From assembly GCF_902652985.1 (NCBI RefSeq), contig NC_047024.1, forward strand, positions 35,588,001-35,652,000: 64,000 nucleotides of DNA. Direction: 5' to 3'. How positions within the stretch are numbered: the stretch's first letter is position 1; every line of letters starts with the position of its first letter. This DNA comes from Pecten maximus. Its lineage: Eukaryota. Of this stretch, positions 3,753 to 59,236 are shown piece by piece. The translations under genes and the position numbers were made by a program. The notes under the pieces are model-generated. The model had not been told where the DNA came from. It ran no database searches and saw nothing but the letters and a program-made list of their open reading frames with translations.

Positions 3753-4090
3753 ATATTTACCATTGTATGGCACTGCCACTATATAACCCTACCAATTCAG
3801 TTGCGAGTTCACCAGCCTATGAACTGCCAACAGGAAGTGATCTCTGCTACTGGTAAGCGCGGGAAATTTGAATTTGAAAATTTCAGAACAAAAATCGCAT
3901 GACAAATAAAAAATCGCAGATGGTAAATATAAGAATTGAACCGCTTTCAGTTGGAATTCATAGTCAATAAGAATTCCAACTGGACAGAGGCAAATTCAAC
4001 ATGAAGCGCTAGCGCGCTTCATGGAATTTGCCTCTGTCCAGTTGGCATTCATATTGACTATGAATGCCAACTGAAAGCCGTTCAATGCTT
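3753..4090. mobile_element. Non-autonomous terminal-hairpin element E1 (B..B'-A..A')
   Basis: Inverted repeat atatttaccat (3753) / atggtaaatat (3920-3930), immediately followed by a ~160-bp palindrome (3931-4090) centred on atgaagcgctagcgcgcttcat. A second copy lies at 4561-4800. Confidence 0.75.
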
Positions 4091-4560
4091 AAATAAATGC
4101 AGCCCAGATCACATGACGTCACTTCCGTCAGCGTCAAAAATATTTGTGGCAATGCGTTGCGGTTGATTCAAACCTAGCAAGGGTTTCGATTTAGAACAAT
4201 CGCGTAAATATGACGTTATTTTGGTGCTTTGTTGATCATAGTCACGCCGAGGCTTTGTATTACACATCAATTTGAATGCAAACCAAGCACTACTATGAAA
4301 ACGATTTCACATGTGCCGTTCTTTCAATGGAACAAACAGGGGAATAGCTTAACTTAAACCCCAGATTTAGCAAACAGAAAGTGAAGTTTAACGTATCTTA
4401 ATGTAAATAAAACAATTAAATATAAATATTCATTCTATTTATCTGTCACCCACATTGCATTGATTTTGCCAATAAATTCAATCTACCGAGCGTTTAATTG
4501 TTAAATAATACATGTTCCTATTTATTTGTGCAGTGTACAAATATTTGTATTGTCTATATT

Positions 4561-4800
4561 ATATTTACCATTGTATGGCACTGCCACTATATAACCCTAC
4601 CAATTCAGTTGCGAGTTCACCAGCTTATGAACTGCCAACTGAAATTTGAATTTGAAAATTTCAAAAAAAAATCGCACGACAAATAAAAAATCGCAGATTG
4701 TAAATATAAGCATTGAACGGCTTTCTGTTGGCATTCATAGTCAATATGAATGCCAACTGGACAGAGGCAAATTCCATGAAGCGCGCTACAATGCTTAAAT
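4561..4800. mobile_element. Internally deleted second copy of E1
   Basis: Near-identical to 3753-4090 but missing ~30 bp of the interior and almost the whole right hairpin arm (gaagcgcgcta joined directly to caatgctt). Confidence 0.8.
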
Positions 4801-6329
4801 AACTATACATTACCTTGGAAGGCTTTCTCTCACCTATACAACTAACTGAATGGTCTACTAGTATATAATAATAATACATGGGGACGACTAGTTATCTGCG
4901 AGCACCAAACCTTCTGATGTCATATCGCATTGCAAAAGGAAATAGAGTAGTTTAAAATGATATCCTGATGTCGCCTATACAATTTGCCCATGGTCCCCAT
5001 CAACCTGCTTTTCTGGAAACCGCGTGTTGTTAATTTTTTTTTCCGGTTGTGGTCGACACGTTCTCGTGATAATGGAAAAGTGTGTTGGTATCATTAATCG
5101 GCAGTATTGATTACAAAGCGTGATGATTTTGTATTTCAAGCTGTTAACTTTCAGGGGTTATATTAAGTCTCAACCTAATATCATTAACCAGAGTGCGTAA
5201 TGGAGACATAATTATTAACAATTATGCATTGACATTTGTCGTTGACTTTACATTTCTGGGTTTACATTCAAACTGAACGAGTCTCAACCTTTCAACTTCT
5301 CATACGTCTACTGTCAGCTAAGTCATCGGGCCTAATATACTACCTTTTCCGTATACTGTTATTTTGTCAGACATTTCCTCCGCGAGGTTTTGTTAGACCT
5401 ATCATTAACCTACATAGTTTGACATCCATTAGGTCTGTCGTCTATTGCGGTAATGGTATCGTAAACGTCCTATGTATGATTATTTAGTGAAAACGTTATG
5501 GATTTTCCCCTTTCTTGAAATTGTCAATGCTTCGTTACGCCTTAGTTAGAAAAACACCATTGGAAATGATGATTTATATGTGTATTTAGCTTTTTAGATT
5601 AAGGAAAGTATAACTGATTGGTTCATTGGTTTTCTCCTCTAATGGTGATTATCAGATCATCATTATGGTCGTTTTTGTTTGTAGGTCAAAGAAAAGCTTT
5701 CCATAGTTTGTCACATTAAAATATCGACAAGTCAGGTCGAGGAAACGTGTTATACTGTATAAAATTAAAGAAAACCTGCCCAATTATTCATATTGAAGCC
5801 AAAACGTCAAAAATTGGCTCAAGGTTCATGGTCAGTGCTATTCCATCTTGGTAATATAAGAAAAAGCAAGACTGTGCTATGGCATCTTGATTATATGAAT
5901 AATCAATAATCAAGCAAAGACACAAACCACTAAGGCTAATGTGGGTTTTGATTTGTTAGATTTCAATCGATTTTGTTTTATTTACCTGAACTGGAAAAAA
6001 GATTTCAGTATATTGTTACAGCGAGATTTACGCTACTTTCAGTGTGAATTTGACATCGGTTTGTTTAACATAATAGTAATTGTCAAAATGTACAAAGATA
6101 CTCCCTGTTTTTTTATCAGTATATGTAATGTCGAAGAATTGTCTCTACCGGAGCCTGATATTGCATATTCGTCCTGACATTAAGTCCATTTGTTATACGT
6201 CGATTTGGCCTATCTAGTAAAGAGGTATTTCAAGTTTAATTTGTACAGATAAACATAATTTTTAATACGTTTTAGATATTTACCACTAAATTGACACTGA
6301 ATTTTGTTTACGATAAGAAAATCATATCT

Positions 6330-6900
6330 CACAGATACACCTGTCCATGTGCAAAAACTTTGGGATATACCAATTACAGTATTGCTACAAGTGTCCAAGT
6401 AAATTAAGGCGTGGATAGCAATGTTACGAGGTAGAATTAAAGATGGGTTTGCAATGTATCTGTCCAAGGTAAGATTGAAGTCTGGATATACAGATCCGGG
6501 GTAGATTAAGGAATAGTTATACATGTTCGGGGTAGAATAAAGAATAGAAACACCTGTCCGGGGTAACATAGAGAATGGGAACACCTGTCTGGGGTAGAAT
6601 AGATAATAGGAACACCTGTCAGGGGTAGAATAGAGAATGGGAACACATGTCCGGGGTAGAATAAAGAATAGAAACACCTGTCCGGGGTAGATTAAAGAAT
6701 GGGAACACCTGTCCGGAGTAGATTAAAGAATGAAAACACCTGTCCGGAGTAGATTAAAGAATGAAAACACCTGTTCAGGGTAGAATTAGGTATCGAAACA
6801 CCTATTCAGGATAGAATAAAGTTCTACTGTTCGGGGTAGACTTAAAAAATTGATACATCAGTCTCGGGTAGAATAGATATGCGTACATCTGTCAATGGTA
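6330..6900. repeat. ~31-bp minisatellite
   Basis: Units like acacctgtccggggtagaataaagaatagaa, degenerating at both edges. Confidence 0.9.
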
Positions 6901-56615: not shown

Positions 56616-57879
56616 CAAGTTGTCATTTATTCAAGGAGCAACGTTGATTCAGGATTTTACCAAATTATATAAGATATCTTATACATGTATACTTTATAAG
56701 ATATCTTGTATATTAAATGAGATATCTTATATACTTTTCTTTATAAGATATCTTATATAATATATAAGATATCTCATAAAAGATATAAGATATCTTATAA
56801 AGAAAATTAAATAAGATATATTATAAACTTTAGAAGATATCTTATATACTTTATAAGATATCTTATATGCTTTATAAGATATCTTGTATATTAAATGAGA
56901 TATCTTATATACTTTTCTTTATAAGATATCTTATGTAATATATAAGATATCTCATAAAAGATTTAAGATATCTTATAAAGAAAATTAAATAAGATATCTT
57001 ATAAACTTTAGACGATATCTTATATACTTTATAAGATATCGTATATACTTTATAAGATATCTTATATATTATATAAGCTATCTTATAAAGGAAATTATCT
57101 AAGATATCTTATAAAATTCGATTATAAGATATCTTATTAAGAACGAGATTTCAATTTGAGATAATGAACTCTCCCCCACTCGATGAAAGAGCCGAGATGA
57201 AGCTGAAACTACATAAAATGGTTTAAAACAAATTCATAATTGCTATATATTCATGTTTGCTCGAACACGACATCTGCACCGTGCCTAGCCGATCGTGATC
57301 CCGACAGAGGGTTGATTGTGAATGTTCCGCTTGCCTTCCAATAAAACGGAAGTTACCTTACAGAGGGAGCAGTCATTCTCGAACTTTTATGTTTTGCCGG
57401 TCTCACGAGAGTCTCGTTCTTTATAATATATCTTATAAAAACCTTTCTTTATAAGCTATCTTATATATTATATAAGATATCATATCTTTTATCAGATATC
57501 TTGTATACTTTATAAGATATCTCTTGAATAAAAGTTTATAAGATATCTTATAAAAGATATAGGATATCTTATATATCATGTAAGATATCTTATATATTAT
57601 ATAAGATATCTTATATAAGATATTTGATATATTATATAAGATATCTTATATATTATATGGGATATCTTATATCTTATATAAGATATCTTATATATTATAT
57701 GGGATATCTTATATCTTATATAAGATATCTTATAAACTTTAAATAAGATATCTTATAATTATATAAGATATCTCATCAACATATAAGATATCTTATAAAC
57801 ATATCAGGTATCTTGTATAATTTGGTAAAATACTGGATCAACATTGCTCCGCGAATAAATGACAACTTTGCTTGCCGTA
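56616..57879. mobile_element. MITE with long TIRs and a tataagatatcttata interior (IS3EU-like right end CCGTA)
   Basis: aagttgtcatttattc..ttttaccaaattata is inverted to tataatttggtaaaa..gaataaatgacaactttgcttgccgta. Confidence 0.88.
57139..57421. mobile_element. Nested small TIR element
   Basis: aagaacgaga / tctcgttctt ends bound a GC-richer island inside the AT-rich MITE. Confidence 0.65.
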
Positions 57880-58193
57880 CAGCAAAATGTGCCTGATATA
57901 TTCCGATCACGCTATATACATTTGTATTACCATTTTGTCAGATACTAATCTGCCTGCTGATTAACTATGCATCAACCTACCTACCTCGACTATCGGTTGT
58001 TTTGGAGTCCCCTGTGTAATTTCAGCCGGGAATCAATATGAATGTTTGGTAACGTTAGTTCAAGTGTAGTTGTTTTTCTTGTCACTGTGACTGTGTAGTA
58101 TGGCTTATATACATTGGGAACCGCAATGGTTTATGAAGGAATCAGTGCTGACAAGTAAGTATGAGTGTTGTAATTATATAAGGGAGCATTCTC

Positions 58194-58483
58194 TATGACA
58201 AGCCAAGTTGTTATACATGCGAGGAGTAATGTTGATCCAGTATTTTACCAAATTATATGATATATAAGATATCTTATATAATTATGAGATTTCTTATATG
58301 TTTATTATATTTCTTATATGTTTATGATATATCTCGTATGTTAATTATATATCATATGTTTATACGATAATATTTTTAAAGAATATGATATGTCTAATAT
58401 GTTATATAGGATATCATATATTAATCTGGTAAAATACTGCATCAACATTGCTCCGTGATTAATTGACAACTTTGCTTTGCATA
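58194..58483. mobile_element. Shorter, older copy of the 56616-57879 MITE family
   Basis: Shares aatgttgatccagtattttaccaaattata and its inverse. Confidence 0.8.
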
Positions 58484-58907
58484 CTTGACACTTGTTCTCA
58501 TTTGTATTAAGGTCTACTAATATATTAATTGTTTACTTCTCTCGTTGATTTTCGTATTTCAATATTTTCTTTTTGCGTTTGACATTAACTATGCCAAAAT
58601 GGATATTTACCCATTGCAACGATTCGGAAAGACAGAAATCACCTCCAATGTAGCTGTATTGAAATGTACTTGGTGACAGGCGTCATTTTTCACCAAATCT
58701 CCATAGAAAATTATTAAACCTTTCGAATTGAATATGAATTTCTCTGTTATATGATATGACTACAAAATTAGCGACATATTATTTATTATTAAATATATAT
58801 ATATACAATAAGGTTTTAAACGATAATTGATACATTATTTTACATATTTCACTTTCATTTTATATGTTTAAACAAAACACACTAAAATAAGCTAAAGTTA
58901 AAATAAT

Positions 58908-59236
58908 TAAGGATCAACTTGAATACATTTTTAATGTTATGAAGGTTTAATACATAAAAAAGTGTATGCTATAAATAAACCGCGAATCGGTTTTATAATG
59001 AGAGTGTGTGTGAAATAACTCCATAACATAAAATATATTCAAGTTAATCCTTATAATTTAATCTATACCCCGCAAAAAATAACTTTATTGGTGGACTTTT
59101 TTCCGTACCAAATCACTACTCTGCTCCATCTTCCAATCAAAAGCGACGTTATGAACGGCGACGTCATATTTTACAATATGGACTGGTAACATAAATTTCT
59201 AAGCCAATGAAAATGCTTGTTACAAACAAGATTATA
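58908..59236. mobile_element. Non-autonomous terminal-hairpin element E5
   Basis: Hairpin taaggatcaacttgaata..tattcaagttaatcctta (58908-59053) with apex aaccgcGAAtcggtt and a subterminal ccaat motif; the B/B' repeat is weak. Confidence 0.55.

What the first reader, a model, noticed from the sequence alone, without database searches (positions are those of the whole stretch)
3753..59236. Divergent non-coding elements share an A-A'-B-B' architecture whose internal junction mirrors the circle junction
Seen: E1 (3753-4090), E2 (10486-11097), E3 (18576-19250), E4 (46852-47276) and more weakly E5 (58908-59236) have little sequence in common. Each is a 145-165-bp terminal hairpin (A..A') abutting a segment bounded by short inverted repeats (B..B'). 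Joining the two outer ends therefore gives the reverse complement of the internal junction. For E1, ttcaatgctt+atatttaccat matches atggtaaatat+aag(a/c)attgaa. No clear TSDs; CCAAT motifs lie in the B segment of E2-E5. Known: DIRS-group tyrosine-recombinase retroelements carry an internal region complementary to both termini, and Cryptons are tyrosine-recombinase DNA transposons. Inference: a structure-defined class of non-autonomous elements mobilised through a circular or single-stranded intermediate. Individual families may already be in repeat libraries even if the shared layout is not described.
Basis: partly seen in the sequence, partly recalled or inferred. Interest (0 to 1): 0.8.

Follow-up and report, generated by a model that had tools for sequence, protein, structure and literature searches.

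The report
Scallop Helitron-type mini-transposons, giant end hairpin
The five odd "hairpin plus inverted-repeat" elements are real, very abundant mobile DNA of the king scallop, but their layout is the known signature of non-autonomous Helitron2/Helentron rolling-circle transposons, unusual here mainly because the end hairpin is five to ten times longer than usual.

Summary
E1-E5, plus two further members I found (E0, E1b), each have a 5' terminal 8-14 nt that is complementary to the sequence directly upstream of a 3'-terminal hairpin. Each unit moves as one piece. Every family gives 1,500-2,900 first-look candidates in the 918-Mb genome (lower bounds), at 75-99% identity. None shows a target-site duplication. 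Contigs from three independent samples join window 3752 to 4093, which is an empty site lacking exactly 340 bp with only a 3-nt overlap.

This layout is already described. It is the asymmetric or subterminal inverted repeat followed by a 3' stem-loop of Helitron2/Helentron (HLE2) elements and their non-autonomous derivatives (HINE, DINE-1, Cg_HINE). These elements are moved by a HUH Rep-helicase through single-stranded or circular DNA.

The genome carries open Helentron reading frames of 2,826 and 3,188 aa. The three I could read have different ends, so no autonomous partner is linked to these families.

The unusual features are:
- 146-173-nt hairpins, kept paired by 16 compensatory changes between E3 and E4;
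- an E1 target that cannot be T|T;
- family-specific bases 6-11 nt upstream of the insertion point.

Verdict: a new variant of a known kind, of modest interest.

The parts
3067..3572 (-). E0: an additional member with the same end motifs as E1 (5' TATATTTACAT..., 3' ...CCTTAAAT) but an ordinary-sized 47-nt 3' hairpin. Hairpin arms are 3070-3083 / 3103-3116. The 3' inverted repeat lies at 3115-3125.
   Evidence: Sequence, inverted repeats and fold. Copy boundaries appear as loose ends at 3066 and 3571-3573 in reads.
3753..4094 (+). E1: 5' inverted repeat 3752-3763, 3' inverted repeat 3920-3931, 3'-terminal hairpin 3927-4094.
   Evidence: At least 1,748 first-look candidates; the scored copies are 97-99% identical and share these boundaries. 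An empty-site joint 3752->4093 is seen in 4 runs from 3 samples.
4561..4800 (+). E1b: an E1-related copy (83% identity) that lacks most of the right hairpin arm but keeps the ...GCTTAAAT end.
   Evidence: Contig depth here is very high.
10481..11096 (-). E2: 5' inverted repeat 11085-11097, 3' inverted repeat 10642-10654, 3'-terminal hairpin 10486-10642.
   Evidence: At least 1,741 first-look candidates; scored copies 88-95% identical, with ends N|ATTCTACCATG ... TTCTTAAAT|A.
18576..19218 (-). E3: 3'-terminal hairpin 18580-18739 and 3' inverted repeat at 18743-18750. The family 5' end is at about 19218. It is degenerate in this copy, and a TATTGCA match sits further out at 19244-19250.
   Evidence: At least 2,928 first-look candidates; scored copies about 80-83% identical.
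46852..47277 (+). E4: 5' inverted repeat 46852-46865, 3' inverted repeat 47098-47111, 3'-terminal hairpin 47113-47275.
   Evidence: At least 2,085 first-look candidates; scored copies 97-99% identical.
58905..59237 (-). E5: 3'-terminal hairpin 58908-59053 and 3' inverted repeat at about 59054-59062. The 5' inverted repeat at about 59229-59237 is degenerate in this copy. The hairpin loop varies between copies and contains microsatellites.
   Evidence: At least 1,558 first-look candidates; scored copies 75-88% identical.

Best explanation
E0-E5 are non-autonomous rolling-circle transposons of the Helitron2/Helentron (HLE2) type. They are HINE-like elements of the king scallop, Pecten maximus.

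Each consists of three parts:
- a 5' terminal inverted repeat;
- an internal non-coding segment;
- the matching 3' inverted repeat followed directly by a 3'-terminal palindrome, which in E1-E5 has grown to 146-173 nt.

The following mechanism is inferred from the family's known biology, not shown here. A HUH Rep-helicase supplied in trans nicks the 5' junction and peels off one strand. On that strand the 5' repeat pairs with the 3' repeat and the palindrome folds. The internal junction then acts as a splint that brings the two ends within 1-4 nt of each other, for termination or circle closure. The strand is then inserted into a target without duplicating it.

Shown here: the anatomy; mobility as one unit; the absence of a TSD; covariation that maintains both pairings; and the presence of Helentron ORFs in the genome.

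Inferred: the enzyme and the order of steps.
For: 1. Architecture. Every member has a 5' terminal 8-14 nt complementary to the sequence directly upstream of a 3'-terminal hairpin. This matches the published HLE2 definition: the 5' ATIR lies 0-2 bp from the end, and the 3' ATIR lies upstream of the hairpin (PMC3627910). [quoted passage not shown]

2. Size continuum. E0 has the same ends as E1 but a normal 47-nt hairpin. The giant hairpin is therefore an expansion within an ordinary family.

3. One mobile unit. Copies share sharp boundaries and give 1,500-2,900 first-look candidates per family.

4. No TSD. Flank comparisons show none. An empty site lacks exactly 340 bp with a 3-nt overlap, in contigs of 4 runs from 3 samples.

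5. Pairing is maintained. Between the E3 and E4 hairpins, of 61 pairs 44 are identical, 16 are compensatory and 1 is other. Their terminal repeats also covary: TATTGCAT/ATGCAATA against TATTACAT/ATGTAATA.

6. Fold. As ssDNA, the repeat helix and the hairpin are adjacent. At the junction 1 nt is left unpaired, with 2-4 nt at the 3' tail.

7. Enzyme is present. There are about 90 Helitron_like_N matches in the genome. The three loci read have the domain order OTU - DUF6570 - Rep - PIF1 - Exo_endo_phos, which is the Helentron/HLE2 architecture. Two are uninterrupted at 2,826 and 3,188 aa; the third (2,723 aa) has two in-frame stops.

8. 5' palindromes. Short palindromes sit next to the 5' repeat, as in Helitron2: CCAT-TGT-ATGG in E1, GTGGC-AAA-GCCAC in E0, CTTGTT-TGT-AACAAG in E5.
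Against: - No autonomous element with E-type ends was found. The three Helentron groups I could read end differently: a short GC hairpin followed by TCTTGTTAG or CTTGTTGAC, or show no E-type motif or palindrome.
- The E1 empty site reads T-ATA-A. None of the four possible placements of the 340-bp insert lies between two T's, which is the usual HLE2 target.
- Hairpins of 146-173 nt are far outside the published range (3' repeat 20-60 nt from the end).
- No circle or tandem junction of E1 appeared among the joints shown. Those data are contigs, not reads, and 55 joints were not listed.
Confidence: 0.7

Rival explanations
1. The elements belong to a separate, undescribed class that uses the same end-juxtaposing fold but another enzyme. 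Candidates are a single-tyrosine HUH (IS200/IS605-like or Replitron-like) or a tyrosine recombinase (Crypton/DIRS-like).
For: - No RepHel partner with these ends was found.
- The E1 target is not T|T.
- Family-specific bases lie 6-11 nt upstream of the insertion point. This recalls the fixed target words of IS200/IS605.
- The hairpins are far longer than in any HLE2 description I read.
Against: - The layout is point for point that of HLE2, including the 5' palindrome and covarying terminal repeats.
- E0 bridges to the normal hairpin size.
- Helentron ORFs are present, two of them uninterrupted.
- Cryptons have short direct repeats at the ends, not inverted ones. DIRS elements are retroelements several kb long.
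- Only 3 of about 90 Rep loci could be read, so the missing partner is weak evidence.
Confidence: 0.13
2. Each 'element' is two independent repeats that happen to lie side by side: a foldback or palindromic MITE inserted next to, or nested in, a second MITE with short terminal inverted repeats.
For: - Other palindromic repeats do occur alone in the window, for example 54841-55136.
- The E3 and E4 hairpins are homologous while most of their internal segments differ. This shows modular evolution.
Against: - In every scored copy of E1, E2 and E4 the two parts are contiguous, with the same outer boundaries.
- The empty site lacks both parts at once.
- There is no TSD around either part.
- The hairpin always abuts the inner repeat within 0-4 nt in seven elements.
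Confidence: 0.04
3. They are ordinary cut-and-paste (DDE) MITEs whose true terminal inverted repeats and TSDs lie at other boundaries.
For: High copy number, small size and AT-rich targets are typical of MITEs.
Against: - The two outer ends are not inverted repeats of each other.
- Boundaries defined from 13-30 copies per family show no TSD.
- The empty site differs by 340 bp, while the family-conserved block is 342 bp. A TA or longer TSD does not fit this.
Confidence: 0.03

Closest known systems
Non-autonomous Helitron2 elements (e.g. Helitron-1N1_CRe, CRe-1/2/3; Bao & Jurka 2013, PMC3627910)
   Same: - The 5' terminal inverted repeat lies 0-2 nt from the end.
- Its partner lies directly upstream of a 3' hairpin.
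- There is a small 5' palindrome.
- The element starts with or next to T.
- The standard Helitron2 non-autonomous elements (e.g. Helitron-1N1_CRe) make no TSD.
- Compensatory changes keep the terminal repeats paired.
   Different: - There the 3' repeat is about 20-30 nt from the end. Here it is 146-173 nt away, except in E0.
- The E1 target reads T-ATA-A rather than T-rich/TT.
- The partner RepHel is not identified.
Helentron-associated interspersed elements: HINE, DINE-1, and bivalve Cg_HINE / pearl (PMC4067079, PMC7492417)
   Same: - 11-15-nt subterminal inverted repeats and a palindrome at the 3' end.
- No TSD, and very high copy number.
- The host genome carries Rep-Hel-endonuclease Helentrons.
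- Found in bivalves.
- Microsatellite-like variable stretches occur (in the E5 loop).
   Different: - Published HINEs have a 5-10-bp palindrome within about 60 nt of the end, and usually central tandem repeats.
- E1-E4 have no central array, and their palindrome is about 80 bp per arm.
- The TT target is not met for E1.
IS91/ISCR and IS200/IS605 (bacterial HUH transposons)
   Same: - Single-strand or rolling-circle movement.
- Hairpins at the ends serve as recognition signals.
- No TSD.
- Insertion occurs next to a short specific target word.
   Different: - These are prokaryotic.
- IS200/IS605 has hairpins at both ends, and its target word abuts the element.
- They lack the 5'-to-3'-subterminal pairing seen here.
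DIRS retroelements and Crypton DNA transposons
   Same: DIRS elements have an internal region complementary to both termini. Both groups lack classical TSDs and use circular intermediates.
   Different: - DIRS elements are retroelements several kb long, encoding RT and a tyrosine recombinase.
- Cryptons end in short direct repeats.
- Neither has a terminal hairpin.
- Nothing in these data points to a tyrosine recombinase.

Membership tests
HLE2 (Helitron2/Helentron) non-autonomous element / HINE | Short inverted repeats: the left one at or within a few nt of the 5' end, the right one subterminal | tested here: met
   8-14-nt pairs in E0-E5 at family level. The left repeat starts 0-1 nt from the boundary defined by copies.
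HLE2 (Helitron2/Helentron) non-autonomous element / HINE | [quoted passage not shown] | tested here: met
   The hairpin abuts or overlaps the right repeat by 0-5 nt and ends 0-6 nt from the 3' boundary. Its size is atypical at 146-173 nt; E0's is 47 nt.
HLE2 (Helitron2/Helentron) non-autonomous element / HINE | Insertion without target-site duplication | tested here: met
   No flank duplication beyond pre-existing minisatellites. The E1 empty site shows a 340-bp difference with a 3-nt overlap.
HLE2 (Helitron2/Helentron) non-autonomous element / HINE | Insertion between T and T (a usual preference, not absolute) | tested here: not met
   The E1 empty site reads ...T-ATA-A... The four possible placements are T|A, A|T, T|A and A|A. 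E3 and E4 begin with a T run, which is compatible with TT, but no empty site was obtained for them.
HLE2 (Helitron2/Helentron) non-autonomous element / HINE | An autonomous partner encoding RepHel with the same terminal sequences | tested here: inconclusive
   Helentron ORFs exist. The three groups read have other 3' ends or none recognisable.
HLE2 (Helitron2/Helentron) non-autonomous element / HINE | A 5' palindrome involving or next to the left repeat (Helitron2, DINE-1 'IR') | tested here: met
   Small palindromes within 10-25 nt of the 5' end in E1, E0 and E5. Not examined in E2-E4.
Cut-and-paste MITE (DDE superfamilies) | Terminal inverted repeats at the two outer ends, flanked by a fixed-length TSD | tested here: not met
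   The outer ends are not complementary and no TSD is present.
DIRS / Crypton (tyrosine-recombinase elements) | Related long copies encoding a tyrosine recombinase; for Crypton, terminal direct repeats | not tested
   I made no search for tyrosine-recombinase genes with these ends. The ends seen are inverted repeats, not direct ones.
IS200/IS605-like | Subterminal hairpins at both ends, and insertion immediately 3' of a fixed 4-5-nt word | tested here: not met
   Only the 3' end has a substantial hairpin. The conserved upstream bases lie 6-11 nt from the insertion point, not abutting it.

The most novel reading that the evidence does not exclude
These families are a distinct lineage of single-strand (HUH-type) transposon with two special properties. 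A very long terminal palindrome and an internal 'splint' hold the two ends together. Each family also chooses its target through a family-specific word 6-11 nt upstream of the cut, read either by the protein bound to the hairpin foot or by pairing with element DNA. That would make it a eukaryotic counterpart of the guide-sequence targeting of IS200/IS605.
Probability: 0.08. Interest if true: 0.75.

Novelty: new variant of a known kind. Interest (0 to 1): 0.33.

Why it matters
The genome paper for this species left 16.7% of the assembly as unclassified repeats and does not mention Helitrons (PMC7191990). The five families looked at here each give 1,500-2,900 first-look candidates. The youngest, E1 and E4, are 97-99% identical among the scored copies, which fits recent or ongoing rolling-circle activity in a commercially fished scallop.

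For transposon biology, the useful points are these:
- There is a natural series from a 47-nt to a 170-nt 3' palindrome on otherwise similar ends.
- The covariation between E3 and E4 is clear, so both pairings are under constraint.
- The fold places the two termini next to each other on an internal splint.

This gives a concrete substrate for testing how HLE2 Rep-helicases recognise the termination signal, a step that is poorly understood. It also shows that annotation tools which restrict the HLE2 right end to a short stem-loop would probably miss such families.

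Tried and rejected
1. Autonomous partner. I fetched three RepHel loci (L115+L116, L117+L118, L119). 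I mapped two 3' ends through copy boundaries. None has E-type ends, and BLAST of E0-E5 against them found nothing significant. No terminal inverted repeats could be found for groups A and B either. Further loci could not be fetched. In particular I could not read the 1,430-1,520-aa open frames at C444, C13:67855 and C6:1145480, which might be Helitron2-like.

2. Preference for minisatellites. 9 of 28 E1 copies lie in tandem arrays. By my rough estimate, such arrays fill about a quarter of this window, so I dropped the idea of a preference or of long TSDs.

3. 'The target word copies the element's own 3' hairpin foot.' By eye this fits E1 (TTCAT against TTCAAT), E2 (ATTAT) and E3/E4 (AATAT). 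A cross-family test was significant only for E2 (p = 0.002; E1 p = 0.84). I keep it only as an idea.

4. Within-family hairpin covariation. It is uninformative because copies are too young: 96-99% of E1-E4 stem positions are Watson-Crick paired and there are 0-2 compensatory pairs.

5. TA or AT target-site duplication for E1. Neither is supported: a TA duplication would make the skip 342 bp, not the 340 bp seen. A 2-bp AT duplication would fit E1's numbers but has no counterpart in E4, and no fixed-length duplication appears in any family.

6. Circle junctions in public data. Only assembled contigs were available. No back-joint of E1 appeared among the joints listed.

7. Rfam. No RNA family matches anywhere in the window, so nothing suggests a SINE or tRNA origin.

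8. Earlier notes of this scan. Nothing was on record.

Full report
**What genome this is.**
The window is G000:C10:35588001-35652000. The assembly has 918,306,378 bases in 3,983 sequences, and C10 is 44,824,366 bp long. These three figures are exactly those published for the king scallop Pecten maximus: total length, scaffold number and N50 (PMC7191990). That paper classed 16.7% of the genome as unclassified repeats and does not mention Helitrons.

**Checking the observation.**
- E1 has a perfect 12-nt pair (3752-3763 / 3920-3931) running into a 168-nt palindrome at 3927-4094.
- E2 has a 157-nt hairpin at 10486-10642, abutting a perfect 13-nt pair at 10642-10654 / 11085-11097.
- E3 has a 160-nt hairpin at 18580-18739.
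- E4 has a 17-nt pair (46849-46865 / 47098-47114) and a 173-nt hairpin at 47107-47279.
- E5 has a 146-nt hairpin at 58908-59053.

Folded as single-stranded DNA, E1 and E4 each give two adjacent closed domains. Their energies are 16-17 standard deviations below shuffled controls.

The statement that the circle junction mirrors the internal junction is true. It follows arithmetically from two inverted-repeat units lying side by side. What it means physically is discussed below.

**Are they mobile, and as one unit?**
Each element was searched against its own genome. Candidate counts below are first-look lower bounds. Only 40 candidates per family were scored, and the identities refer to those.

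| Family | First-look candidates | Identity of scored copies |
|---|---|---|
| E1 | at least 1,748 | 97-99% |
| E2 | at least 1,741 | 88-95% |
| E3 | at least 2,928 | about 80-83% |
| E4 | at least 2,085 | 97-99% |
| E5 | at least 1,558 | 75-88% |

Aligning 13-30 copies per family with their flanks gives sharp common boundaries that enclose both parts:
- E1, 3753-4094: (T)|ATATTTACCAT ... GCTTAAAT|R
- E2, 10481-11096, minus strand: N|ATTCTACCATG ... TTCTTAAAT|A
- E3, 18576-19218, minus strand: TTATTGCATTTTTGCCAG ... AATATCCTCTAT
- E4, 46852-47277: N|TTTATTACATTTTTACCAG ... GATATCCTCTAT
- E5, 58905-59237, minus strand: TAATTYAATCTTG ... TTAATCCTTA

Two corrections follow. The family pair is TATTGCAT / ATGCAATA, and the window copy's 5' end has decayed. 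Second, the weak B pair of E5 becomes clear at family level as TAATTTAAT / ATTAAATTA.

The families are also not unrelated. The E3 and E4 hairpins are homologous (69.5% over 200 bp). The ends fall into two groups...CTTAA(A)T and ...ATATCCTCTAT.

I found two more members beside E1.
- E0 (3067-3572, minus strand) has E1-like ends but a hairpin of only 47 nt.
- E1b (4561-4800) is a diverged E1 that has lost most of one hairpin arm.

**Target sites.**
No family shows a target-site duplication.

Nine of 28 E1 copies have similar sequence on both sides. In those cases the flanks are multi-unit minisatellites. By my rough estimate such arrays fill about a quarter of this window, so they are pre-existing arrays and not long duplications.

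Assembled contigs from four public runs, representing three samples, were laid on 2800-5400. All four contain a joint from 3752 to 4093 that skips 340 bp, with 3 nt (ATA) fitting either side. The flanks are themselves repeated, so this is an allelic or paralogous empty site. It shows that hairpin and B segment are absent together and that nothing is duplicated.

The block conserved among copies is 342 bp, so an AT is present once in the empty site. The four possible placements of the insert are T|A, A|T, T|A and A|A. None is the T|T usual for this kind of element.

Upstream of the insertion point each family has position-specific conserved bases:
- E1: TTCAT at -11 to -7, with A at -8 in 25 of 28 copies.
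- E2: ATTAT at -10 to -6.
- E3 and E4: AATAT at about -10 to -6, with T at -7 in 20 of 20 E4 copies.

By eye these words resemble the foot of each family's own 3' hairpin. A cross-family test supports that only for E2, so I record it as an idea and not as a finding.

**What the layout is.**
[quoted passage not shown] This is the published terminal structure of Helitron2/Helentron elements, now grouped as HLE2.
- Bao and Jurka describe asymmetric terminal inverted repeats. The 5' one lies 0-2 bp from the end and the 3' one upstream of the hairpin. They also describe a 5' hairpin, a 5' T, and compensatory changes, and they proposed that pairing of the two repeats marks the end of rolling-circle replication (PMC3627910).
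- Thomas and colleagues describe 12-15-bp subterminal repeats plus a 3' palindrome in Helentrons and in their non-autonomous HINE/DINE-1 derivatives (PMC4067079).
- The HELIANO paper states the canonical HLE2 structure in the same words (PMC11417382).
- Eleven Cg_HINE families with this structure are known in the Pacific oyster (PMC7492417).

The mechanism attached to it is a HUH Rep-helicase acting through single-stranded and circular DNA.

**Evidence that the pairings matter.**
Within families the copies are too young to be informative: 96-99% of E1-E4 stem positions are Watson-Crick paired.

Between the E3 and E4 consensus hairpins, which are 74% identical, there are 61 predicted pairs. Of these 44 are unchanged, 16 have changed on both sides and still pair, and only one does not fit either class. 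The terminal repeats covary too: TATTGCAT/ATGCAATA in E3 against TATTACAT/ATGTAATA in E4.

In the predicted ssDNA folds the repeat helix and the hairpin are directly adjacent. The 5' nucleotide and the 3' end therefore sit at the same junction. One nucleotide is left unpaired there, with 2-4 nt at the 3' tail. This is the physical content of the 'mirror junction': the internal junction can act as a splint that aligns the two termini.

**The enzyme.**
The genome has about 90 matches to the Helitron Rep domain, many inside open frames of 2,800-3,200 codons. I could fetch three loci.
- All three carry the domain order OTU - DUF6570 - Rep - PIF1 helicase - Exo_endo_phos endonuclease.
- Two are uninterrupted, at 2,826 and 3,188 aa. 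The third, at 2,723 aa, has two in-frame stops.
- This is the Helentron architecture. DUF6570 and the endonuclease are the HLE2 markers named in PMC11417382.

Their ends, however, are not E-type.
- The 2,826-aa group ends sharply at L118:~8119 in 18 copies, with a 6-bp GC hairpin followed by TCTTGTTAG.
- The 3,188-aa group ends similarly at L116:~8874.
- The last 200 bp of the first group is shared with high-copy short repeats that carry 155-bp tandem arrays. These look like classical HINEs, which would show a Helentron-to-HINE relation in this genome for ordinary short-hairpin families.

For the E families no partner is linked. Among those are a group with 1,430-1,520-aa frames.

**Rivals.**
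- A side-by-side pair of independent MITEs is excluded by the common boundaries and by the empty site.
- A cut-and-paste MITE is excluded by the lack of outer inverted repeats and of any TSD.
- A separate class using another enzyme cannot be excluded while the partner is unknown. Three features keep it alive at roughly one chance in eight: the non-TT target of E1, the upstream target words, and the giant hairpins.

**Verdict.**
It is wrong that the layout is undescribed, and the tyrosine-recombinase analogy lacks support.

The elements work like, and most probably are, non-autonomous HLE2 elements. Membership is not proven, because the partner test is inconclusive and the TT-target habit is not met for E1.

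The new features are the 146-173-nt terminal palindrome with clear compensatory evolution, and the family-specific upstream target bases. Interest is modest.

Noticed in passing
window 6495-63257 (many arrays, e.g. 7403-8685, 15178-16726, 24083-26368, 33440-35312, 37001-38380): The window is packed with minisatellite arrays of 21-317-bp units. By my rough estimate they cover about a quarter of the 64 kb (not computed).
   Followed up: partly
window 54841-55136: A different kind of repeat: 52-nt terminal inverted repeats (96% complementary) enclosing about ten palindromic 22-bp units (TTTTGCCTAGGCAAAA...). It is foldback/MITE-like and does not have the hairpin-plus-repeat layout.
   Followed up: partly
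window 56688-57117 and 57450-57819: Two arrays of a 21-bp palindromic unit (TATAAGATATCTTATA...) form very long imperfect palindromes.
   Followed up: no
window 11528-11808: The 5' 278 nt of E2 is repeated 712 bp away at 97-98% identity. By the whole-genome match (window 11528-11852), the copy also includes 44 nt of E2's flank. Because the flank is included, this is a local segmental duplication and not a second insertion.
   Followed up: partly
L073 (G000:C3497:26300-28300) and L074 (G000:C2:23648100-23650100): E3 copies stand head to tail. The 3' end ...CCTCTAT runs straight into an E3 unit that lacks its first ~34 nt, and a third unit lacks ~94 nt. The same arrangement occurs at two loci. 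It could be rolling-circle read-through or later array growth.
   Followed up: partly
L117+L118 (G000:C10:7602001-7622000) and L115+L116 (G000:C17:18558001-18578000): These are uninterrupted Helentron ORFs of 2,826 and 3,188 aa (OTU-DUF6570-Rep-PIF1-endonuclease) inside elements longer than 15 kb. The last ~200 bp of the first is shared with high-copy short repeats that carry 155-bp tandem arrays, which look like classical HINEs.
   Followed up: partly
window 3927-4094, in public contigs: Many contigs carry internal deletions of 54-79 nt inside the E1 palindrome (e.g. 3933->4010, 4009->4074). E1b has lost one arm. Long palindromes are evidently unstable after insertion.
   Followed up: no
B segments of E2-E5 (e.g. 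E4 46945-46949 and 46984-46988; E3 element positions 145 and 383; E5 element positions 72 and 101): CCAATCA(G)-type and GACGTC-type motifs recur in the internal segments. They resemble CCAAT boxes and cAMP-response elements. CCAAT is only about twice the window background, but GATTGG is kept in most of the diverged E5 copies.
   Followed up: partly
window 845-1344: A run of 500 N, an assembly gap. I left it untouched.
   Followed up: no
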